IMG/VR virus record: IMGVR_UViG_3300021511_000003
Coordinates: 1-64,000 of that record
Direction: 5' to 3' (one strand)
Length of the DNA stretch: 64,000 nucleotides
Below the pieces are notes generated by a model. The model saw only the letters and a program-made list of their open reading frames with translations, made no database searches and was not told where the DNA came from. A program made the translations under genes and the position numbers. Positions within the stretch are counted from its first letter, which is position 1; each line of letters opens with the position of its first letter. This document shows, piece after piece, positions 38,781 to 58,886 of the stretch.

Positions 38781-39127
38781 GCTCCTAACACCTCTTGTTT
38801 TTTATATTGTATTTCATCCCAAGGTGTAAAGTAACAGTCATCTAAATTAAAGCATAATAACATATTAGTAATCATATTTTTAGACTTGTTCGTTAAATTA
38901 TATTTTCGTAAACTATGTGGTATACAAAACTCTCCACTTTTTGGTATTGCATTTGGGTGTGGATTATCTAATATAACCATATCAATTTTACCATTAACAG
39001 TTTTAACAATAAAACCATCAACTTCAAATTTATTTGCTAGTTTCGTAATTGTATATATTTCATTTTTATATATTAATTTCCTTGGTTTGATAAATTCGGT
39101 TATTTCATGATTTTTTATTATCATCAT
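38759..39127 (-). CDS. Small putative E2/UBC-like protein
   Basis: HPNAIPKSGEFCIP resembles the E2 signature HPN-x(7)-C with one extra residue; coupled to the upstream ThiF gene by ATGA overlap. Confidence 0.5.
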   Translation of the reverse strand: MMIIKNHEITEFIKPRKLIYKNEIYTITKLANKFEVDGFIVKTVNGKIDMVILDNPHPNAIPKSGEFCIPHSLRKYNLTNKSKNMITNMLLCFNLDDCYFTPWDEIQYKKQEVLGAWKIKKN

Positions 39128-39984
39128 GCAGCTCCGGTTTCAGGAATTAACTCGACATAAACATTACTGTTTTCATTGTATAGTGATATTACAAAATTAT
39201 TAAAATCTGTCTGACAAGATACTAAAGACATAAATAATGTAATTAAATCTTTACCATTTTTCAAAGAGTTCATTGGAATCACTTTTTCAGAAACAGGAAA
39301 CATTCTACTTCCAAGAAATACAGTAACATCTTTATCTTTGTTTATATCCATTATTGGGACAATTTTATCTGGCAAATTTAAAAATTTTTCATTCCCCAGA
39401 ATGTTTTCATATACTATATCATAATTTTTATTATCAATATGCTTGACATAATCGAGTTCATATTTTTGAATAGATTTACTTTTTATAAGAGTTGTAATTA
39501 TATCACAATGAATCAACATAGAAATAATTGAAGCAGCATACCTCAAATCATTTCTTGATAATTCTAAAATATATTTTCCAGCCTGTAAGCAAGAGTATGT
39601 AACATTTTTTCTAAAGTCACCCATTAAATATCTTGATGATATGTAAAATCTTGCATCAATCTCTTTTTGTCGATCATAGGTATAATCTCTACAATCAATT
39701 ACTAAATCCTCTTTTATAAGTTTTGTTTTACCTTCCTTATATTTACTTTGAAATGCACATATTTCAAGATCAGGATTTTGATCATGTAGAATATCTTTTA
39801 GAGCTTCGACTTTTGGGGCACCTATATCGACTTGTCGGTAAATCGAATTCTTCAAATTCTTTTTCTCAACTATATCGTGGTCTAATATAACTATCTTCTC
39901 AATTCCTTCCAAATTAGCTATAGCTTCTGCTACAAATCCACCGAGTGTTCCTAACCCAATTATTACTATATTTTTATACACCAC
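39124..39984 (-). CDS. Divergent ThiF/E1-like protein with C-terminal extension
   Basis: IIGLGTLGG, DHDIVEKKNL, GAPKVEAL, IDCRD; lacks the canonical NxxRQ arginine; ends VELIPETGAA. Confidence 0.8.
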   Translation of the reverse strand: MVYKNIVIIGLGTLGGFVAEAIANLEGIEKIVILDHDIVEKKNLKNSIYRQVDIGAPKVEALKDILHDQNPDLEICAFQSKYKEGKTKLIKEDLVIDCRDYTYDRQKEIDARFYISSRYLMGDFRKNVTYSCLQAGKYILELSRNDLRYAASIISMLIHCDIITTLIKSKSIQKYELDYVKHIDNKNYDIVYENILGNEKFLNLPDKIVPIMDINKDKDVTVFLGSRMFPVSEKVIPMNSLKNGKDLITLFMSLVSCQTDFNNFVISLYNENSNVYVELIPETGAA

Positions 39985-40013
39985 GGGTCATAGTCTCCTT
40001 TACTGATATTGTG

Positions 40014-40032
40014 GGGGGATACAATATCCCCC
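40014..40032 (-). terminator. GC hairpin GGGGGATA-CAA-TATCCCCC (plus-strand sequence)
   Basis: 8-bp stem between 40052-40618 and the second ThiF gene; U tract weak. Confidence 0.5.
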
Positions 40033-40051
40033 TCATTATAAAAACTGATAT

Positions 40052-40618
40052 TTATAGTTGAGCTTCCTCCATCGGTTCAGTGAAAATATCTAGTTCTTTA
40101 AGCATTTGTTGTTCTTCAGTACCAACCGGAACTGGTCGATAATGTGATTTATACTTAAAGAAATTATTTGCCAATTTAATGGGATAGCTTAAGGGGATAT
40201 TATATGAATATTTCTTTATTTTACCACTTTTCAAAATATTAACTGGTAATGTCGGATCTATTCGTGATAATTCTCCAGCAATTTCACTCCTGAAATGAAG
40301 GTCACCTTTTGCATCTTTTACTTTAAAAGATCGGTTAATAACTTTATCATCTCGGGATGAACCGTTGATTTTCATTTTATTTTCTTTTCTGATCAATGCT
40401 TTCATAGCGCGACCAAATGCTATATTTTTTCCTTTTACTTTTGAAAATGTATCGCGTAGAGAGCATATTGCAACTCCTCTTGATTCAATACGTTTTAACT
40501 TTGAATTGATAAAAACACAAGCTGTGAAAACATTATTCGCAATAGCACTTCCTGCAACATAAAATGCTACTTTATCAACTCTATTGTTGTTCAATATCTT
40601 TTGTGTTTCAGGATTCAT
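40052..40618 (-). CDS. Conserved phage hypothetical protein
   Basis: GVAICSLRDTFSKVKGKNIAFGRA, a CSxxDxF-x-KxxG-xx-IA pattern I recognise from other phage proteins. Confidence 0.7.
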   Translation of the reverse strand: MNPETQKILNNNRVDKVAFYVAGSAIANNVFTACVFINSKLKRIESRGVAICSLRDTFSKVKGKNIAFGRAMKALIRKENKMKINGSSRDDKVINRSFKVKDAKGDLHFRSEIAGELSRIDPTLPVNILKSGKIKKYSYNIPLSYPIKLANNFFKYKSHYRPVPVGTEEQQMLKELDIFTEPMEEAQL

Positions 40619-40642
40619 ATCATATTCCTTTGTTATTGGTTA

Positions 40643-40660
40643 GGGGGCCCGAAGACCCCC
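40643..40660 (-). other. Stable RNA hairpin GGGGGUC-UUCG-GGCCCCC downstream of the Ubl gene
   Basis: C(UUCG)G tetraloop on the mRNA strand; no U tract follows. Confidence 0.7.
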
Positions 40661-40674
40661 ATTTCTAATGATAT

Positions 40675-41145
40675 TTAACCTTTCTTCCCTGCTGGTTTCA
40701 GGAATTCCAGATTGTCGCCGGAGTTTAGAACATACTCCGCATCGACTTCTTTGCCATTAACCAGTCCTGTAGAAAGACGATCAACATTCAGAACTTCACG
40801 AAGGAAGTCACCAACTTCTTTTACGCTCTTACCGGCAACTGGGAAATTACCAGAAGATGCTCCACAAGATACATGAATGGTTGTGGTGGCACGGGAACCG
40901 AAAGGGGCATCGGGTTTAGTAATTGTACTTTGACCGGTAAACTGAATACCGGTAAGTTTTTCCATTGCCTTTTCGGGAGCTTTGCTAATTGTTGAACCAC
41001 CGCCATAACGAGCGAGAATTGCATTGATAACGGTATTTTTATTTTTTTTGGAAACCCCCGGGATATTCAATTCATCAATACACATTCTTTTAAGGGCTTT
41101 GGATGTTTTGGCTTCAAGTTCTTCTCTTTTGAAAATTCTTCCCAT
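40675..41145 (-). CDS. Ubiquitin-like (beta-grasp) modifier with N-terminal HeH/Rho-N-like domain
   Basis: C-terminal ~70 aa IHVSCG...VAGKSVKEV...LVNGKEV...VLNSGDNLEFLKPAGKKG-COOH; N-terminal LEAKTSKALKRMC...IPGVSKKNKNTVINAIL. Confidence 0.8.
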   Translation of the reverse strand: MGRIFKREELEAKTSKALKRMCIDELNIPGVSKKNKNTVINAILARYGGGSTISKAPEKAMEKLTGIQFTGQSTITKPDAPFGSRATTTIHVSCGASSGNFPVAGKSVKEVGDFLREVLNVDRLSTGLVNGKEVDAEYVLNSGDNLEFLKPAGKKG

Positions 41146-41161
41146 TGTAAAATCTCCTTTG

Positions 41162-41848
41162 TTAATGTTTCACGATTCGAATTTTTGCATCTGCAGTCAT
41201 TTTTGTTAAATCAAAATAAACTTCAGATCGTTCATACTCGTCTTTGACTACAACGTTGTAGAAAGACCAACACATCAAAGTTGCAACCCCCAGATTTGCA
41301 AAGTATAGTTGGGGGTCAGAATGAGCAAGCTCATCACAACTCATTTCTTCTGGTAATTTATCATCTGGCTCTGCTATTTCTGGATGATATGCACATAGAT
41401 CAGGAGTTAAGTCTTTTCCATCTCTTCTAATATAAATCTGCACATTACCATCTGTATAGTCATTGCCACCAGAAATTAAAATAACATTTTGTAAATTTTT
41501 ACAGTAATTGGATACAATCATTCTGGTTTTGTGATTATCAACACATAGAAATACAATATAGTCTTCTTTAATAACTTCTTCTACAGTTTTTTCATTTACA
41601 AAAGCTTCGAATGCATTAAACTCTAGTCCATCAAATTTCATTTCAAGTTCGGTAGCTTTTATATCAGCTTTATTTCCGATACGAAAAAACTCTTGTCGTT
41701 CATAATTTTTTTGTTCATACTCGTCTCCATCCACCAATAGTAATTCTGCATCAAGATCTTTTGAATAGTTTAAAAATCTACATAATCTCTCAACTAATAT
41801 AGAACCAACTCCACCAAGTCCAATAACTGATATAAACATGTCAGACAT
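41162..41848 (-). CDS. ThiF/E1 family activating enzyme
   Basis: VIGLGGVG, DGDEYEQKNYERQ, LCVDNHKTR, SGGND...GNVQ, MSC (candidate catalytic Cys), QLYFAN. Confidence 0.92.
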   Translation of the reverse strand: MSDMFISVIGLGGVGSILVERLCRFLNYSKDLDAELLLVDGDEYEQKNYERQEFFRIGNKADIKATELEMKFDGLEFNAFEAFVNEKTVEEVIKEDYIVFLCVDNHKTRMIVSNYCKNLQNVILISGGNDYTDGNVQIYIRRDGKDLTPDLCAYHPEIAEPDDKLPEEMSCDELAHSDPQLYFANLGVATLMCWSFYNVVVKDEYERSEVYFDLTKMTADAKIRIVKH

Positions 41849-43386
41849 TATAAAACCTCTCTTTTAAATACTTTTTTAAACATAGCCATGAGACCATTTG
41901 GTTGTTCTGATATTGGTATTATGGTTGATCCTGGTTCCGGTATTCTTTGAATAGGTTCATCCTCCTTTTTAGCAGCTTGAGTTATCTCATCTACTTCTCG
42001 TGTTAAAAGCACTCCTTTATTTGTATATGGTTGTTCAGGTTTTTCTATACTATTAATTGGAGTGTAACAGAAAGGACAAGTTTCATCACTATTGTTTAAG
42101 TGAAAGCCATTACCACATTCTTTACATTTAATATATGAAGATTCTTCAATTTCTTTTGTAGAATCTTTTTTAAACATGTGGTCATATTCATCGCCTGGTA
42201 TATATTGATCTGACAGAACTTCCTCTTTATCTAATAGAATAAGATGTTCATTTGTATTACATGTGGAACATTGGAGTTCGAATCCTTCTTCCTCTTTAAC
42301 AATCTCGCCACAATTTTTACAAAAATACATCTCTTCAAAATCATCTTCCTCAATCTCAGAAGTAAGTTTGCAAAGTCTATGAGTGCATGTGGCACATGGT
42401 ACAAAGTCACCATCCTGAGTATGTGGAGGGAACTTTAAAGGTGTTGGTATCACTGGTTTAATACCTGGCTTGGAAGCACGTGAATTAATATTTTTTCCAT
42501 TTTGCTTCCAAATAGAACGATCATAATTAAAACCCCAACCATCATTATATGCATGAGCAGCATATCCATACCATCCAGCGTATCCATTACGATAACTTGG
42601 GAAGGTGTAAACACCCTTTTCTACCATACTCATCCAGTTTTTATTGAAAATACGATCCTCATCTGAGCATACTATATCATATCTACGATCAAATTTTTTA
42701 CGCTCGAATGGATATTTGGGCTTGACATCTACATCTTCAATAAGTTTTCCATTTTTCCATTTATAAACTGTTTTAACTGATTTATTATCAATGGAATTAG
42801 TTTCAGACATACACACTATATTATCAATATATTTTTCAGGTTCTATCATTTGTCGAAACCCGTTTGATACAATTGATGAAGAAAGGCTGGGATATTTATC
42901 ACCTAAATCTCCAAATGTCAGATGAAGTCCATCAAAATGTTCTTCATCACTATCATCAACTCCTGAATGAAACGCTGACATGTTTCCATGACTATGAATA
43001 GTTCCAATCATTGTATATCCATCAATAGTCAAACCTTTATCATAATCACAGCTAGCACCTGCGACTTTTTGATGTGGCGGAACAATTTTATGTTCTCCCG
43101 TTTGTTCATTATAGAACAATAGAACGATTGCTTCTGATCTGTTATATGTATCATATACTTCTCGAAAAAAGCTTATAACTTTTGCAATATATTTTCCAGG
43201 AATCTTTGTAATATGCATTCGTGCACTTGATGCCACACTTTCAAGAATTGAGATATTTTTAACCGGTGCAATACTTTCCATTACACCAAGTTTCTTTTTA
43301 AGAAATACTCCCTCCTTACCAATAATATAATAAATATCATCTTTAGGCATTTCATTTTGCCCATCATTCAGGACTACTTTAAACAT
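41848..43386 (-). CDS. JAB/MPN metalloprotease with C-terminal zinc ribbons
   Basis: SEAIVLL, GTIHSHGNMSAFHSGVDDSDE; CATC, CKNC...CSTC, CKEC...CPFC. Confidence 0.9.
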   Translation of the reverse strand: MFKVVLNDGQNEMPKDDIYYIIGKEGVFLKKKLGVMESIAPVKNISILESVASSARMHITKIPGKYIAKVISFFREVYDTYNRSEAIVLLFYNEQTGEHKIVPPHQKVAGASCDYDKGLTIDGYTMIGTIHSHGNMSAFHSGVDDSDEEHFDGLHLTFGDLGDKYPSLSSSIVSNGFRQMIEPEKYIDNIVCMSETNSIDNKSVKTVYKWKNGKLIEDVDVKPKYPFERKKFDRRYDIVCSDEDRIFNKNWMSMVEKGVYTFPSYRNGYAGWYGYAAHAYNDGWGFNYDRSIWKQNGKNINSRASKPGIKPVIPTPLKFPPHTQDGDFVPCATCTHRLCKLTSEIEEDDFEEMYFCKNCGEIVKEEEGFELQCSTCNTNEHLILLDKEEVLSDQYIPGDEYDHMFKKDSTKEIEESSYIKCKECGNGFHLNNSDETCPFCYTPINSIEKPEQPYTNKGVLLTREVDEITQAAKKEDEPIQRIPEPGSTIIPISEQPNGLMAMFKKVFKREVL

Positions 43387-45958
43387 TAATCATACTCCTT
43401 TCATCATTTATGAATTCAAATATTGAAGAATTACAGGTATAAGTATGTCCGTGGCAATTTGTCCAACCTCTTTTAGTACCAATTTCATTCTGTATTCTTT
43501 GTGAAATTCTTGGATTTAATATATAATCGAATTTGTAGTTTACAGCAGTATATTTATCCAGTAAAGTATACCTTGGAATTCGTGTATAATATTTCAAGTC
43601 TAATATATTTAACTTATGATTACCGTTTATCTTAAACACAATGCAACCGGCATCGGTTTGATATTCATTCTCACCAACAATAATATCACCAGGTTGAAAT
43701 TTAATTTTTGCAATATCAATGGGGGCATGTGAAATAGTTGCCCATTTTTTATTCGTCATTGAAATTTTCTTGAACTTATTGATTACATCACTGTACCATA
43801 AAGTACAACAATTTGAACATAGTACTAATGGATCAGACCCACCTGTATCTGTTATAAAACCAATGATAATATGTGTATCTTTTTTAAGGAAATGTAAAAT
43901 ACCAGTCTCTTGAGCTTGAATTTTCATCCCTGCTGTAAGGTTGCCATATACATTTGTAATATGCCTGATTTTTCCTGTAAATATTGATCCGGTTGGTCCA
44001 TCAACATACTTTATTTGGTGTAGTATACCTTCCTTATCAGCTAATATAAAATGTATATCTCCTCTCTCTTCATTAAATTTAAATCCTTGAATTATTTTTA
44101 TCGAAAGCATATTTATTGGATTTTCCCAATCAGAAGTAACAACTTTGTCTCCTATAGCAAAGTCAATGTTCATATCATAACTTTCAACTCTGAATTTATC
44201 ATCGTTCAAAATATATTTTTTTATTTCCAATGGTGATGGAATTGCGGCAGATTGATATCTATTATCAATTGCGACACCATTTGGAGTACCAAATGTTGTA
44301 CCTTCCATGGGATCATGTGTATTTCGTCTCGACATTATTAATGTACGACCGACTCTAACAAGTGGCGGTAATGGTTTGATAGTTTCTGTATCAAATATCA
44401 ATGAATTGTGTATTGTTGAATCTATGTTTATTCTAAAATAGTCATTATTTAAGTTATCATCTATACTTCGAAATTGTAGTTTTAATCTATCTGTATGATC
44501 AACATTAAAATCATCATATTTTACCAAATAACCACTGAGTAGGGGGGTTTCATTTGTTGCACCATTTATAAATAAATAAGTTTTATCCTTTGTTAGTTTA
44601 AGACCATTATATACTGGGTTTGATAAATTATAAACTTTCGCTTCTAAATGTTCAAGAATATAGAAACCATCACCAAAACATGCTTCGTGATATCCTTCTT
44701 GATTAAGACGAATATAACCAACCTTCTTATATACAGTATTACCGATACCATTTTTCATTTGAACAATGTCATCCTTTTTAACAATATCACCATTTTTCAA
44801 CGTACCTTCTTTTTCGTATCGAAGTTCTATAGTTTTTTCTTTCAGAAATTTTGAAAATGCTTTTGTGTTTTTATAAATAATCAAACGACCATCTTCTCTT
44901 TCAACTCTGAAATATTTGATACCTCCACTATTTTCAAAACTAATAAGCGAATTGATATAACACATACGTTTATTATTTTTAATAAGGAATGGATCTCCTA
45001 CATGAATATAAAATTTGTTATCCAGAAATACACCCTCTGCAACATCATAGTATAACTTATATTTCTTTTTGGCTCGCTTTGTTGGTTTGGCAACTTTACC
45101 TGTATCCATTTTTGTTGAAAACATTTGAGTGAGGGATTTATATTCAACTTGTTTTGTGGTTTTATTATTATGTCGTTTTATTTCATCAATGGCTTGACCA
45201 AAATTCATTGGAATTTTAATCCAGTCAACATTATAAATAAACATAGGATTTAATTTAGATAAACCCTGCCATTCCATATATGTACTAACACCAGCAACTT
45301 TTTCATATGCATGATAGTTATACATGTAGTCATTATTAAACTCAGCACCCCAGAATACATTAATTGCTTTTTCAACTGCTGCATTCAATGACTCAGATAT
45401 TCCACTTGATTTAGTACCAAAACAAATATACTGACTTTCTGAAATATTTGGTAATGGTATTTTAAGAAGATAATCTGATAATCCTGTTAATCTTGCAACT
45501 CTCAAAAATGCCTGACCACATCGTATATCATAAAAATCATCGATATATAAAATAAAGATAACATATGGGAATGCCAAATTAAATGACGGTACTTCATCAA
45601 TGTTGGTTGTAAAATTTTCACTATAATCATATTTTTCAAGTCTACCACTACGTTTTAGTATATTAGTTTCACGTTGAAAATTTAAATCGATTTTAATTGT
45701 TCTAAACGCTGGTGGTTCTTCAATAGCAATGATATACCCACCTTGTACTCTTTCCATAAATCTACAATTTGGTGGTAAAACATTCATTGATTGATCGTTT
45801 ATAGTAAGTGCAATACGTTTAAGATAATCTATAGTAAGAAGGGATTTCTTATGAATAACTGGTAATGAATCATTATTTAATATTGAATCCTTGTATTCAG
45901 ATCTATATAAATTCGTATACTTTGAGTTTATTCTTATTTCATTTTTTAAATTCATCAT
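43379..45958 (-). CDS. Prokaryotic E2-like conjugating enzyme (PRTRC-B/Prok-E2 type) with ~600-aa C-terminal extension
   Basis: LAFPYVIF...LLKIPLPNISESQYICFG...VFWGAEFNND within the first ~230 aa; adjacent to JAB, E1 and Ubl genes. Confidence 0.75.
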   Translation of the reverse strand: MMNLKNEIRINSKYTNLYRSEYKDSILNNDSLPVIHKKSLLTIDYLKRIALTINDQSMNVLPPNCRFMERVQGGYIIAIEEPPAFRTIKIDLNFQRETNILKRSGRLEKYDYSENFTTNIDEVPSFNLAFPYVIFILYIDDFYDIRCGQAFLRVARLTGLSDYLLKIPLPNISESQYICFGTKSSGISESLNAAVEKAINVFWGAEFNNDYMYNYHAYEKVAGVSTYMEWQGLSKLNPMFIYNVDWIKIPMNFGQAIDEIKRHNNKTTKQVEYKSLTQMFSTKMDTGKVAKPTKRAKKKYKLYYDVAEGVFLDNKFYIHVGDPFLIKNNKRMCYINSLISFENSGGIKYFRVEREDGRLIIYKNTKAFSKFLKEKTIELRYEKEGTLKNGDIVKKDDIVQMKNGIGNTVYKKVGYIRLNQEGYHEACFGDGFYILEHLEAKVYNLSNPVYNGLKLTKDKTYLFINGATNETPLLSGYLVKYDDFNVDHTDRLKLQFRSIDDNLNNDYFRINIDSTIHNSLIFDTETIKPLPPLVRVGRTLIMSRRNTHDPMEGTTFGTPNGVAIDNRYQSAAIPSPLEIKKYILNDDKFRVESYDMNIDFAIGDKVVTSDWENPINMLSIKIIQGFKFNEERGDIHFILADKEGILHQIKYVDGPTGSIFTGKIRHITNVYGNLTAGMKIQAQETGILHFLKKDTHIIIGFITDTGGSDPLVLCSNCCTLWYSDVINKFKKISMTNKKWATISHAPIDIAKIKFQPGDIIVGENEYQTDAGCIVFKINGNHKLNILDLKYYTRIPRYTLLDKYTAVNYKFDYILNPRISQRIQNEIGTKRGWTNCHGHTYTCNSSIFEFINDERSMINV

Positions 45959-58840: not shown

Positions 58841-58886
58841 AAAACACCAATGAATAAATATTCTAATATTTATTCATTGGCGTTTT
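58841..58886 (-). terminator. Long AT-rich hairpin terminator
   Basis: AAAACACCAATGAATAAATA / TATTTATTCATTGGCGTTTT, 20 bp with one mismatch; T6 follows on the minus strand. Confidence 0.7.

What the first reader, a model, noticed from the sequence alone, without database searches (positions are those of the whole stretch)
40643..41145. Ubl carries a HeH/Rho-N-like nucleic-acid-binding domain, is unusually GC-rich and is followed by a cUUCGg hairpin
Seen: the N-terminal ~45 aa match the helix-extension-helix pattern of Rho-N domains, joined by a GGGS linker to the beta-grasp domain. The two lines counted (40681-40800) have 54/120 G+C, well above flanking genes. An ultra-stable GGGGGUC-UUCG-GGCCCCC hairpin without a U tract follows the stop. 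Inference: a highly expressed modifier whose mRNA is stabilised relative to downstream genes. Conjugation would give targets a DNA/RNA tether, an unusual readout for a Ubl.
Basis: partly seen in the sequence, partly recalled or inferred. Interest (0 to 1): 0.62.

Follow-up and report, generated by a model that had tools for sequence, protein, structure and literature searches.

The report
Phage ubiquitin-like modifier with DNA-binding-type head
An uncultured jumbo phage carries, as a core gene next to its RNA polymerase genes, a ubiquitin-like protein fused to a Rho-N/HeH domain; its codon usage points to high output, it is followed by a conserved very stable RNA hairpin, and it sits in a cassette of E2-like, JAMM-peptidase and E1 genes.

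Summary
All three observations are real and all are conserved traits of a family, not oddities of this window.

**The protein.** The ORF at 40675-41145 (minus strand, 156 aa) has three parts: a basic three-helix Rho_N/HeH domain, a flexible linker that includes GGGS, and a MoaD/ThiS/ubiquitin-type beta-grasp. The beta-grasp ends in an invariant AGKKG, which about half of the relatives extend by a Cys or more.

**GC content.** The gene has 42% GC in a 30% GC genome. About half of the excess comes from amino-acid composition. The rest comes from a shift to particular codons (NNC, CTG, CGT; no ATA or TTA). This shift is seen in 54 of 54 related loci and, more weakly, in the major head protein gene.

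**The hairpin.** In 51 of 61 loci it is the most stable local fold on the sense strand in about 12 kb. It is kept by compensatory changes, is rich in UNCG/GNRA loops and almost never has a U tract. The head and sheath genes of the same genome end in canonical hairpin-plus-U terminators.

**Context.** The order E2-like, JAMM, E1, Ubl, second E1-like, then RNA polymerase beta' is conserved in all 60 related loci. A model docks the Ubl tail into the E1 ATP site (0.83, best control 0.00).

**Not shown.** High expression is supported only indirectly. mRNA stabilisation, nucleic-acid binding and conjugation are untested. No RNA run was listed.

The parts
40675..41145 (-). Ubl gene (156 aa plus TAA stop): HeH domain, linker and beta-grasp ending in AGKKG
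41002..41145 (-). Residues 1-48: basic (net +6) three-helix Rho_N/HeH-type domain. Invariant L10, C22, L26, G30, K33, K36 and I43.
40894..41001 (-). Residues 49-84: linker. The first part is variable and includes GGGS. The second part is a conserved motif (TG.EFTGQS..TKP.A.FG) that is poorly modelled.
40678..40893 (-). Residues 85-156: beta-grasp (order beta-beta-alpha-beta-beta) with invariant VSCGAS, LNV, VNG, GD.LEF and a C-terminal LKPAGKKG
   Evidence: docks on the E1
40643..40660 (-). RNA hairpin GGGGGUC-UUCG-GGCCCCC, 14 nt after the stop codon. No U tract follows, and the Shine-Dalgarno site of the next gene lies about 15 nt downstream.
41154..41159 (-). AAGGAG Shine-Dalgarno site, 8 nt before the Ubl ATG
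41162..41848 (-). E1a: 228-aa ThiF/MoeB-type adenylating enzyme. Conserved GxGGxG, DGD..N..RQ, DN...R and invariant Cys171 and Cys193. Predicted to take the Ubl tail into its ATP site.
41848..43386 (-). JAMM/JAB peptidase (HSHx7SxxD, PRTRC_A-like N-domain) with five conserved CxxC pairs in its C-terminal half
43379..45958 (-). 859-aa protein whose N-terminal part is E2-like: an invariant Asn171 and Cys179 eight residues apart in PLPNI....IC.G. A homologue carries Pfam Prok-E2_D.
39124..39984 (-). E1b: second ThiF-like protein (286 aa). The Rossmann motif is kept, the NxxRQ motif is poorly conserved, and the C-terminal tail ...PETGAA is conserved.
40052..40618 (-). Accessory 188-aa gene of unknown function, present between the Ubl and E1b in 19 of 60 related loci
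40014..40032 (-). Second G5/C5 hairpin (GGGGGAU-AUUGU-AUCCCCC), after the 188-aa gene and just before the E1b Shine-Dalgarno site

Best explanation
**What the gene encodes.** It encodes the modifier of a phage-borne ubiquitin-like system. The protein has a basic HeH (Rho_N-type) head, a flexible linker and a MoaD/ThiS-class beta-grasp. The invariant C-terminal Gly of the beta-grasp is the reactive end.

**Proposed pathway (inferred).**
1. Where residues follow that Gly (a Cys in about half of the relatives, long tails or further Ubl repeats in others), the neighbouring JAMM peptidase would trim them.
2. The adjacent 228-aa E1 would adenylate the Gly.
3. The E2-like domain of the 859-aa protein (Cys179) would take over the Ubl and pass it to targets that are still unknown.
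4. Because attachment is through the C-terminus, every conjugate would keep the HeH head.

**Shown here:** the two folds, the conserved terminus, the conserved gene order and a predicted E1 docking mode.

**Inferred:** processing, thioester transfer, conjugation and nucleic-acid binding.

**Expression design.** The cistron looks built to yield more product than the enzyme genes. It has its own strong Shine-Dalgarno site. It also uses codons that avoid the A-ending codons served by the phage's own tRNAs (ATA, TTA, AGA) in favour of NNC, CTG and CGT. That codon choice, together with a Gly/Ala/Pro/Arg-rich composition, produces the GC peak.

**The hairpin.** It acts at the RNA level. The most likely role is a barrier to 3'-to-5' exonucleases, a partial stop to transcription, or both. 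Either would leave the Ubl message more abundant than the downstream E1b and RNA polymerase genes.
For: **Folds**

**Family and C-terminus**
- 382 close homologues and 685 clusters at 50% identity.
- The terminus is an invariant ...AG.KG.
- Variants with extra C-terminal residues, tandem poly-Ubl repeats each ending in AGKKG-like motifs, and one to three HeH copies imply cleavage after the Gly.

**Gene order and descent**
- The order E2-like, JAMM, E1a, Ubl, E1b, then beta' holds in all 60 related loci.
- Ubl and E1a are nearly as conserved as beta' (median identity 59, 66 and 68%).
- Ubl divergence tracks that of its neighbours (rho 0.77-0.92).

**Enzymes**
- The JAMM motif and the E1 motifs are conserved.
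- Complex model of E1a with Ubl residues 85-156: score 0.83, best of 3 controls 0.00. That mark was reached by 51 of 78 solved complexes and 2 of 108 mismatched pairs. The runs agree in at least 98% of contacts and the partner's pLDDT is 88.
- In that model, tail residues 149-156 touch E1a residues 10 and 12-15 (the GxGGxG loop) and 102-106.

**GC and codons**
- In 54 of 54 loci GC3 exceeds expectation (0.38 against 0.216).
- The shift is codon-specific.
- The phage carries tRNA genes for Ile-UAU, Leu-UAA and Arg-UCU.
- The window's gene has no ATA or TTA codon and ranks 3rd of 250 ORFs for C over C+T at third positions.
- The major head protein shows the same direction of bias.

**Hairpin**
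- It is the top-ranked fold in 51 of 61 loci and in the top three in 58 of 61.
- Among 54 distinct hairpin sequences, 18 have UNCG loops and 4 have GAAA loops; only 2 are followed by a U tract.
- All 9 stem pairs show compensatory changes, 96.5% of cells are paired, and 0 of 500 shuffles reach the observed value.
- Canonical U-tract terminators follow the sheath and head genes of the same genome.
Against: - There are no expression data: no RNA run was listed.
- The complex pass may reflect memory of MoeB-MoaD and ThiF-ThiS structures (caveat stated).
- The E2 assignment rests on one Pfam hit in a homologue, an Atlas look-alike and a motif. The profile found nothing in the PDB.
- No E3 or target is known.
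- A penultimate Lys (KG rather than GG) is unusual for E1 substrates.
- The hairpin is not specific to the Ubl. A second one follows the accessory 188-aa gene in 12 of 15 distinct loci, and locus L055 has only that one. The constant position may therefore be 'just upstream of E1b'.
- The sheath gene has GC3 of only 0.16, so codon bias is not uniform among genes that are probably abundant.
- The covariation alignment was anchored on predicted hairpins, so its percentage paired is partly circular.
Confidence: 0.6

Rival explanations
1. The hairpin serves the downstream message. After a cut or a start just upstream of it, it becomes a 5'-terminal stem-loop, next to a strong Shine-Dalgarno site, that protects the E1b and RNA polymerase mRNA from 5'-end-dependent decay. 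It may do this as well as, or instead of, protecting the Ubl 3' end.
For: - The hairpin always lies 5-25 nt before the next ribosome-binding site.
- Where the accessory gene is present, a hairpin again sits directly before the E1b Shine-Dalgarno site.
- Locus L055 keeps only that hairpin.
Against: - In loci with the accessory gene, the post-Ubl hairpin is kept although it no longer precedes E1b.
- No promoter or processing site is known.
- The Ubl, not E1b, carries the codon signature of high output.
Confidence: 0.2
2. The hairpin is a true transcription terminator for an RNA polymerase that does not need a U tract, for example the phage's own beta/beta' enzyme. It would close an operon of E2-like, JAMM, E1a and Ubl genes.
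For: - It is the most stable local structure in most loci.
- The phage encodes its own beta' and beta subunits just downstream.
- A few relatives do have U-rich tails (L020, L021).
Against: - Only 2 of 54 distinct hairpins are followed by at least 5 U in the next 8 nt.
- The same genome uses canonical hairpin-plus-U terminators after the head and sheath genes.
- The gap between the stem and the next ribosome-binding site is too short to hold a promoter, so the downstream genes need read-through.
Confidence: 0.2
3. The beta-grasp protein is a sulfur carrier of the ThiS/MoaD/TtuB type rather than a protein modifier. E1a would make a thiocarboxylate and the JAMM enzyme would only trim the precursor.
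For: - The nearest sequence and fold relatives are MoaD, ThiS and TtuB.
- A JAMM enzyme that removes residues after the terminal Gly is known for sulfur carriers (QbsD/QbsE and Mec+/CysO; own knowledge).
Against: - No TtuA- or MnmA-type sulfurtransferase was found in the 223 kb held. The record is only 71% complete.
- An E2-like protein with an invariant Cys is encoded in the cassette.
- Poly-Ubl repeats and HeH fusions fit a modifier better than a carrier.
Confidence: 0.12
4. The GC-rich gene is a recent horizontal acquisition from a GC-richer donor.
For: It is a local GC peak in a 30% GC genome.
Against: - The excess is present in 54 of 54 related loci, whatever their own GC.
- Ubl divergence tracks that of beta', E1a and the E2-like gene (rho 0.77-0.92).
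- The shift is codon-specific, not a blanket GC shift.
Confidence: 0.03
5. The HeH head is a protein-binding or localisation module, for example one that contacts the polymerase or a partner of the cassette, and is not a nucleic-acid tether.
For: - The matching part of Rho is its N-terminal helix bundle. Its main RNA site is the adjacent OB-fold, which this protein lacks (for the aligned range; own knowledge for the rest).
- The cassette is always next to the polymerase genes.
Against: - The domain has a net charge of +6 and an invariant K-K-x-K loop.
- SAP and LEM-type HeH domains bind DNA (own knowledge).
- Relatives carry two or three HeH copies, and some carry Lys-rich tails.
Confidence: 0.3

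Closest known systems
MoaD/ThiS with MoeB/ThiF, and archaeal SAMP/UbaA/HvJAMM1 and Thermus TtuB/TtuC (prokaryotic beta-grasp proteins activated by a single-domain E1, some trimmed or removed by a JAMM peptidase)
   Same: - The beta-grasp fold is the same (MoaD Z 5.8-6.2).
- There is a C-terminal Gly.
- A short single-domain ThiF-type E1 is encoded next door.
- A JAMM peptidase is in the cassette.
- The predicted docking mode puts the tail in the ATP site.
   Different: - It ends in KG, not GG.
- It carries an N-terminal HeH domain.
- It is phage-encoded.
- It comes with an E2-like protein and a second E1-like protein.
- No sulfur-transfer partner was found.
- Matches to NCBIfam MoaD models are only weak (best E 0.0019, below cut-off).
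Bacterial Ubl conjugation operons: Bil, Bub (6E) and type II CBASS Cap2/Cap3 (PMC11601596, PMC11601603, PMC10557695)
   Same: - The gene set is the same: separate or fused E1, E2, JAB and Ubl.
- Ubls of these operons can carry varied N-terminal domains and one to three beta-grasp repeats (PMC11601603).
   Different: - Those are host anti-phage systems. This one is a core cassette of the phage itself.
- PADLOC gives no hit for the Ubl, the JAB or the E2-like protein. E1a gets only marginal hits.
- E1b matches only the adenylation-domain part of the E1-E2 (Cap2-type) models.
- An HeH head is not among the N-terminal domains listed in PMC11601603.
PRTRC cassette (ParB-related, ThiF-related; NCBIfam TIGR03734-03742)
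   Same: The JAMM N-domain and E1a give their best NCBIfam hits to PRTRC_A (E 8.6e-10) and PRTRC_ThiF (E 5.8e-11).
   Different: - Both scores are far below the curated cut-offs (38.5 against 101.8 bits, and 42.2 against 144.75 bits).
- PRTRC_B and PRTRC_C are not found.
Eukaryotic ubiquitin genes (polyubiquitin and ubiquitin-extension fusions) and Sde2 (Ubl fused to a SAP-domain protein); own knowledge
   Same: - Relatives occur as head-to-tail repeats, or with C-terminal extensions after the reactive Gly.
- The sequence is very strongly conserved.
- A Ubl is combined with an HeH/SAP-type module.
   Different: - Here the HeH lies N-terminal to the Ubl, so it would stay on the modifier after conjugation. 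In Sde2 the Ubl is cut off.
- There is no sequence kinship beyond the shared fold.
C(UUCG)G hairpins of phage T4 intercistronic regions, and intercistronic stem-loops that set differential mRNA stability in operons (Tuerk et al. 1988; the E. coli malE-malF REP element; the Rhodobacter puf operon); own knowledge
   Same: - It is a very stable UNCG tetraloop stem.
- It lies between two cistrons of one phage transcription unit.
- It has no U tract.
   Different: - Its function has not been measured here.
- The loop sequence is not fixed across relatives (UUCG in 12, UCCG in 5 and GAAA in 4 of 54).

Membership tests
Beta-grasp ubiquitin-like modifier / ThiS-MoaD class | Beta-grasp fold | tested here: met
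   - The domain model has pLDDT 78.
- Foldseek matches TGS, SUMO, ubiquitin (TM 0.69, rmsd 2.1 A) and MoaD at probability 1.0.
- VIA-align gives MoaD at Z 6.2.
Beta-grasp ubiquitin-like modifier / ThiS-MoaD class | Conserved C-terminal Gly at the end of the fold, exposed or exposable by cleavage | tested here: met
   - G156 and K155 are invariant in 90 sequences.
- The protein ends at the Gly, or is followed by a Cys, by tails, or by further repeats.
Beta-grasp ubiquitin-like modifier / ThiS-MoaD class | Cognate E1 that binds the tail in its adenylation site | tested here: met
   - An adjacent E1 is conserved in all loci.
- The complex model scores 0.83, with the best control at 0.00. This is a prediction, not a measurement.
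Beta-grasp ubiquitin-like modifier / ThiS-MoaD class | Covalent attachment to targets, or thiocarboxylate formation | not testable with these tools
   This needs biochemistry or mass spectrometry.
Rho_N / HeH (SAP, LEM) domains | Sequence match to the family | tested here: met
   - The family profile matches Rho N-termini in the PDB at E 1.4e-4.
- PF07498 is recorded on homologues P0047, P0079 and P0097.
Rho_N / HeH (SAP, LEM) domains | Helix-extended loop-helix fold | tested here: met
   - The model has helices at 7-12, 15-24 and 36-47.
- It aligns to 1a62 residues 1-47 with Z 5.8 and rmsd 2.7 A.
- The Atlas gives TM 0.74-0.82.
Rho_N / HeH (SAP, LEM) domains | Binds DNA or RNA | not testable with these tools
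   Only the net charge of +6 and conserved Lys residues can be cited.
Intrinsic (Rho-independent) terminator | GC-rich stem-loop | tested here: met
Intrinsic (Rho-independent) terminator | U tract directly after the stem | tested here: not met
   - The tail on the sense strand is UAACCAAUAACA.
- Only 2 of 54 related hairpins have at least 5 U in the next 8 nt.
- The tool's only terminator call at this site is on the untranscribed plus strand.
UNCG extra-stable tetraloop hairpin | C(UUCG)G loop with its closing pair on a G-C-rich stem | tested here: met
   - The window's stem has this form.
- 18 of 54 distinct related hairpins have UNCG loops.
PRTRC system | Members reach the curated NCBIfam cut-offs, and PRTRC_B and PRTRC_C are present | tested here: not met
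Bil / Bub / CBASS-Cap2 defence operons | Matches to PADLOC models of the components | tested here: not met
   - There is no hit for the Ubl, the JAB or the E2-like protein.
- E1a gets only marginal hits (E-values of 0.0017 and 0.0094).
- E1b hits only the E1 part of the E1-E2 models.
Prok-E2_D (PF14460) for the 859-aa neighbour | UBC-like core with a conserved catalytic Cys | tested here: inconclusive
   - Asn171 and Cys179 are invariant and 8 residues apart.
- Homologue P0273 carries PF14460.
- An Atlas look-alike gives TM 0.67 over 200 residues.
- There is no sequence match in the PDB.

The most novel reading that the evidence does not exclude
A large clade of uncultured jumbo phages runs its own complete ubiquitin-like conjugation pathway (E2-like, JAMM, E1, and a Ubl as conserved as the polymerase) as a core function linked to transcription. 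Its modifier carries a nucleic-acid-binding head, so modification would place or hold target proteins on DNA or RNA. This would be a phage counterpart of SUMO-type chromatin tagging, and the mirror image of the host's Bil defence.
Probability: 0.35. Interest if true: 0.85.

Novelty: new variant of a known kind. Interest (0 to 1): 0.68.

Why it matters
Ubiquitin-like conjugation in prokaryotes is so far known mainly as sulfur chemistry or as host defence against phages (Bil, Bub, CBASS). In this case the phage itself carries the machinery.

- The cassette is found in every one of 60 related genomes.
- It always lies next to the phage RNA polymerase genes.
- Its modifier and E1 are about as conserved as the polymerase.

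If the system conjugates, three things follow:
- Phages would use Ubl tagging for their own programme.
- The HeH head would be a new kind of readout for a Ubl.
- The poly-Ubl and extension variants would give an independent example of ubiquitin-style precursor processing.

The gene is also a clean natural case for testing how codon choice and a 3' stem-loop set the ratio of products within one operon.

Tried and rejected
**Searches that found nothing**
- PHROGs, NCBIfam and PADLOC gave no family for the Ubl.
- tblastn of the Ubl against 50,697 phage records gave no match.
- The nearest cultured phages are Bacillus jumbo phages with a PRTRC_A-like plus ThiF pair at about 30% identity. They have no Ubl beside the pair.
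- RNA evidence: none was listed by the look-up of sequencing runs.
- Rfam: nothing relevant in 39900-41300.
- PRTRC_B, PRTRC_C, TtuA-type and MnmA-type families: no hit in the 223-kb record.
- The profile of the E2-like region found no relative in the PDB.
- Literature searches found no description of this phage cassette or of an HeH-Ubl fusion. The 2021 jumbo-phage survey (PMC7824862) does not mention E1, JAB or Ubl genes.

**Explanations rejected**
- Horizontal transfer as the cause of the GC peak.
- A canonical terminator.

**Weak or technical results**
- The first whole-protein model was weak for beta-strand 1 (pLDDT below 50 at residues 86-96). A domain-only model resolved it.
- MAFFT shifted five hairpins in the first loop-anchored alignment (A5), so they were left out of A6.
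Full report
**Setting.** The window is the first 64 kb of a 223-kb IMG/VR virus record estimated to be 71% complete, with 30% GC. It is a jumbo myovirus:
- tail sheath, baseplate, large terminase, SbcC and topoisomerase II genes are present;
- the major head protein gene lies elsewhere in the record;
- the beta' and beta subunits of a multisubunit RNA polymerase are encoded;
- there are 23 tRNA genes.

Every gene from about 16.7 kb to 64 kb is on the minus strand.

**The observation.** The ORF at 40675..41145 (minus strand) encodes 156 aa.

*N-terminal domain.* Residues 1-48 form a Rho_N/HeH-type domain.
- A profile of 90 family members matches the N-terminus of Rho in the PDB (3l0o, E 1.4e-4, plus many other Rho chains).
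- Three homologues of about 69% identity carry Pfam PF07498.
- The AlphaFold model has three helices with pLDDT 78-89.
- Model residues 5-52 superpose on residues 1-47 of E. coli Rho (1a62; Z 5.8, rmsd 2.7 A, 47 aligned).
- The Atlas model aligns residues 1-49 to Rho_N clusters at TM 0.74-0.82.
- The domain has a net charge of +6.

*Linker.* A low-confidence linker containing GGGS follows. Its second half, TG.EFTGQS..TKP.A.FG, is conserved.

*C-terminal domain.* Residues 85-156 are a beta-grasp.
- The domain-only model has pLDDT 78 and pTM 0.61.
- Foldseek matches TGS, SUMO, ubiquitin, NEDD8 and MoaD at probability 1.0.
- VIA-align gives MoaD at Z 5.8-6.2.

*GC content.*
- The count of 54/120 is exact.
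- The gene has GC 0.42 and GC3 0.32. The ORF means are 0.300 (sd 0.041) and 0.197.

*Hairpin.*
- It lies at 40643-40660 (minus strand), 14 nt after the stop, and has no U tract.

**A conserved family.**
- The protein has 382 close homologues of 63-79% identity.
- A profile search finds 685 clusters at 50% identity.
- The beta-grasp is nearly invariant and always ends in ...AG.KG. About half of the close relatives add a Cys.
- Wider relatives include stand-alone 68-73-aa Ubls.
- Some relatives are head-to-tail poly-Ubls of three or four repeats, each ending in AGKKG-like motifs.
- Some relatives have two or three HeH copies before one Ubl.
- Some relatives have long Lys-rich extensions after the Gly.
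- These variants only make sense if a peptidase cuts after that Gly, as happens with ubiquitin precursors.

**Context.**
- In 60 related loci the gene order is constant: 859-aa protein, JAMM protein, E1a, Ubl, E1b, small genes, then beta' (and beta in the two loci whose genes were listed).
- An extra 188-aa gene lies after the Ubl in 19 of the 60 loci.
- Median identity to the window's proteins is 68% for beta', 66% for E1a, 59% for the Ubl, 41% for E1b and the JAMM protein, and 35% for the 859-aa protein.
- Ubl divergence tracks that of its neighbours (rho 0.77-0.92), which indicates vertical descent.
- The JAMM protein has an intact HSHx7SxxD motif and five conserved CxxC pairs.
- E1a keeps the nucleotide-binding and catalytic motifs of ThiF/MoeB and has two invariant Cys residues.
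- E1b keeps the Rossmann motif, has a poorly conserved NxxRQ motif and has a conserved C-terminal tail.

*The 859-aa protein is E2-like.*
- In 36 sequences an invariant Asn171 and Cys179 lie eight residues apart in PLPNI....IC.G. This recalls the HPN...C core of UBC enzymes.
- A homologue of 45% identity carries Pfam Prok-E2_D.
- The Atlas's model resembles Prok-E2_D clusters at TM 0.67 over 200 residues.
- This remains a lead. The PDB profile search was blank and I could not fold the protein.

*Predicted E1-Ubl complex.*
- E1a with Ubl residues 85-156 scored 0.83, with the best of 3 controls at 0.00.
- That mark was reached by 51 of 78 solved complexes and 2 of 108 mismatched pairs.
- The runs agree in at least 98% of contacts, and the partner's pLDDT is 88.
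- Tail residues 149-156 sit against the GxGGxG loop and the DN..R motif.
- Because MoeB-MoaD-type complexes are solved, this shows likeness to them, not proof of binding.

*Gene spacing.* The three enzyme genes overlap one another (by 8 nt and by 1 nt). The Ubl has a 16-nt spacer and its own AAGGAG site.

**Why the gene is GC-rich.**
- Across 54 loci the Ubl gene averages GC 0.458. Its amino-acid sequence and local codon usage predict 0.392, and neighbouring genes average 0.321.
- GC3 is 0.38 against 0.216 expected, and it is higher than expected in 54 of 54 loci.
- About half of the excess therefore comes from composition and half from synonymous choice.
- The synonymous shift is specific to particular codons (Ubl against neighbours):

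| Codon | Ubl | Neighbours |
|---|---|---|
| TTC | 0.57 | 0.25 |
| ATC | 0.38 | 0.13 |
| ACC | 0.38 | 0.11 |
| CTG | 0.32 | 0.05 |
| CGT | 0.33 | 0.10 |
| ATA | 0.07 | 0.34 |
| TTA | 0.06 | 0.42 |

- GCG, GGG, ACG and TCG are not raised, and AAG and GAG hardly change.
- This is the signature of translational selection, not of a GC-rich donor or of blanket GC enrichment.
- The avoided codons are the ones read by phage tRNAs Ile-UAU, Leu-UAA and Arg-UCU.
- The window's gene has no ATA or TTA codon at all and ranks 3rd of 250 ORFs for C over C+T at third positions.
- The major head protein gene and a 347-aa gene of unknown function that ends in a canonical terminator show the same direction more weakly: ATA 0.00-0.12, and CTG 0.19 or CGT 0.50.
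- The sheath gene shows it only in ATA avoidance.
- High output is therefore supported indirectly. Early expression, before the phage tRNAs accumulate, would fit equally well.

**The hairpin.**
- In 51 of 61 loci the stem-loop just after the Ubl stop is the most stable 34-nt fold on the sense strand in about 12 kb. In 58 of 61 it is in the top three.
- There are 54 distinct hairpin sequences, with a median energy of -20 kcal/mol, placed about 14 nt after the stop. The window's hairpin (-13.5) is one of the weakest.
- Loops are UUCG in 12, UCCG in 5, GUCG in 1 and GAAA in 4. The extra stability of such loops belongs to RNA rather than DNA (own knowledge), which points to a role in the transcript.
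- On a loop-anchored alignment of 32 tetraloop versions, all 9 pairs show changes on both sides, 96.5% of cells pair, and no shuffle of 500 reaches this. The anchoring makes the percentage paired partly circular. The ranking is the independent test.
- Only 2 of 54 hairpins have a U tract.
- In the same genome the sheath gene, the major head gene and the 347-aa gene end in textbook hairpin-plus-U terminators. The post-Ubl element is therefore a different class.
- It lies 5-25 nt before the next ribosome-binding site, too close for a promoter in between, so downstream genes need read-through.
- My best reading is a 3' exonuclease barrier, a partial stop, or both, that raises the Ubl over the downstream genes. 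This is the arrangement known from T4 CUUCGG hairpins and from intercistronic stabilisers (own knowledge).
- One caveat applies. Where the 188-aa gene is present it is usually followed by its own hairpin (12 of 15 distinct loci; 40014-40032 in the window), and L055 has only that one. The element may therefore mark cistron boundaries upstream of E1b rather than the Ubl alone, and it could also protect the 5' end of the downstream message.

**Comparison with known systems.**
- By fold and neighbourhood this works like the MoaD/ThiS-E1 and SAMP/TtuB systems, and like the bacterial Bil, Bub and Cap2/Cap3 conjugation operons (PMC11601596, PMC11601603).
- It is not a member of those families by the tests available. 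PADLOC models do not match the Ubl, the JAB or the E2-like protein.
- PRTRC_A and PRTRC_ThiF are the best NCBIfam hits but fall far below cut-off, and PRTRC_B and PRTRC_C are absent.
- MoaD models match only weakly.
- No TtuA- or MnmA-type sulfurtransferase was found. This lowers the sulfur-carrier reading but does not exclude it.
- No cultured phage in the collection has the Ubl.
- The papers I could search do not describe it.

**Verdict.** I file it as a new variant of a known kind. It is a phage-encoded ubiquitin-like cassette linked to the polymerase genes, and its modifier carries an HeH head and a KG terminus.

Noticed in passing
G000 168062-168133 (minus strand), outside the window: One of the 23 phage tRNA genes has anticodon CUA, which would read the TAG stop codon (ARAGORN labels it Pyl). 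TAG may be read through or recoded in part of this genome. The genes studied here end in TAA and have no in-frame TAG.
   Followed up: no
window 40052-40618 (minus strand) and 40014-40032 (minus strand): A 188-aa gene of unknown function lies between the Ubl hairpin and E1b in only 19 of 60 related loci. It is usually followed by its own strong G/C hairpin, so hairpins bracket this accessory gene.
   Followed up: partly
window 39124-39984 (minus strand): The second ThiF-like protein (E1b) keeps the Rossmann motif, has a poorly conserved NxxRQ motif and has a conserved C-terminal tail ...PETGAA. It may be an inactive partner of E1a, like the heterodimeric E1s of eukaryotes, or its tail may itself be a substrate.
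   Followed up: partly
window 41848-43386 (minus strand), residues about 330-440: The JAMM peptidase carries five conserved CxxC pairs (331/334, 356/359, 373/376, 421/424, 437/440). These are probable zinc ribbons. Whether they form a RING-like E3 module is unknown.
   Followed up: partly
proteins P0160, P0187, P0217, P0245 and P0249; P0167 and P0215; loci L049 and L051: Relatives of the Ubl occur as tandem poly-Ubls, as (HeH-Ubl) x 2, and with Lys-rich C-terminal extensions after the reactive Gly that contain repeated NRPEVKAK-like motifs. From memory, those motifs resemble NUMOD3 DNA-binding motifs.
   Followed up: partly
window 40903-40959 (minus strand), residues 63-81 of the Ubl: The second half of the 'linker' is well conserved (TG.EFTGQS..TKP.A.FG) although it is modelled with pLDDT below 50. 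It may be a docking motif rather than a spacer.
   Followed up: no
locus L062 (Bacillus phage vB_BauM_KLEB27-3, OM634661.1 162788-173354): A cultured jumbo Bacillus phage has an adjacent pair of a PRTRC_A-like JAB gene and a ThiF gene (about 31% identity to E1a). No Ubl ORF lies beside the pair.
   Followed up: partly
window 58841-58886: A perfect AT-rich inverted repeat with 21-bp arms lies in an intergenic region.
   Followed up: no
G000 78684-80556 (minus strand), outside the window: Two adjacent genes for proteins with signal-peptide-like N-termini have the highest GC in the genome (0.43 and 0.46). They share part of the C-ending codon bias.
   Followed up: no
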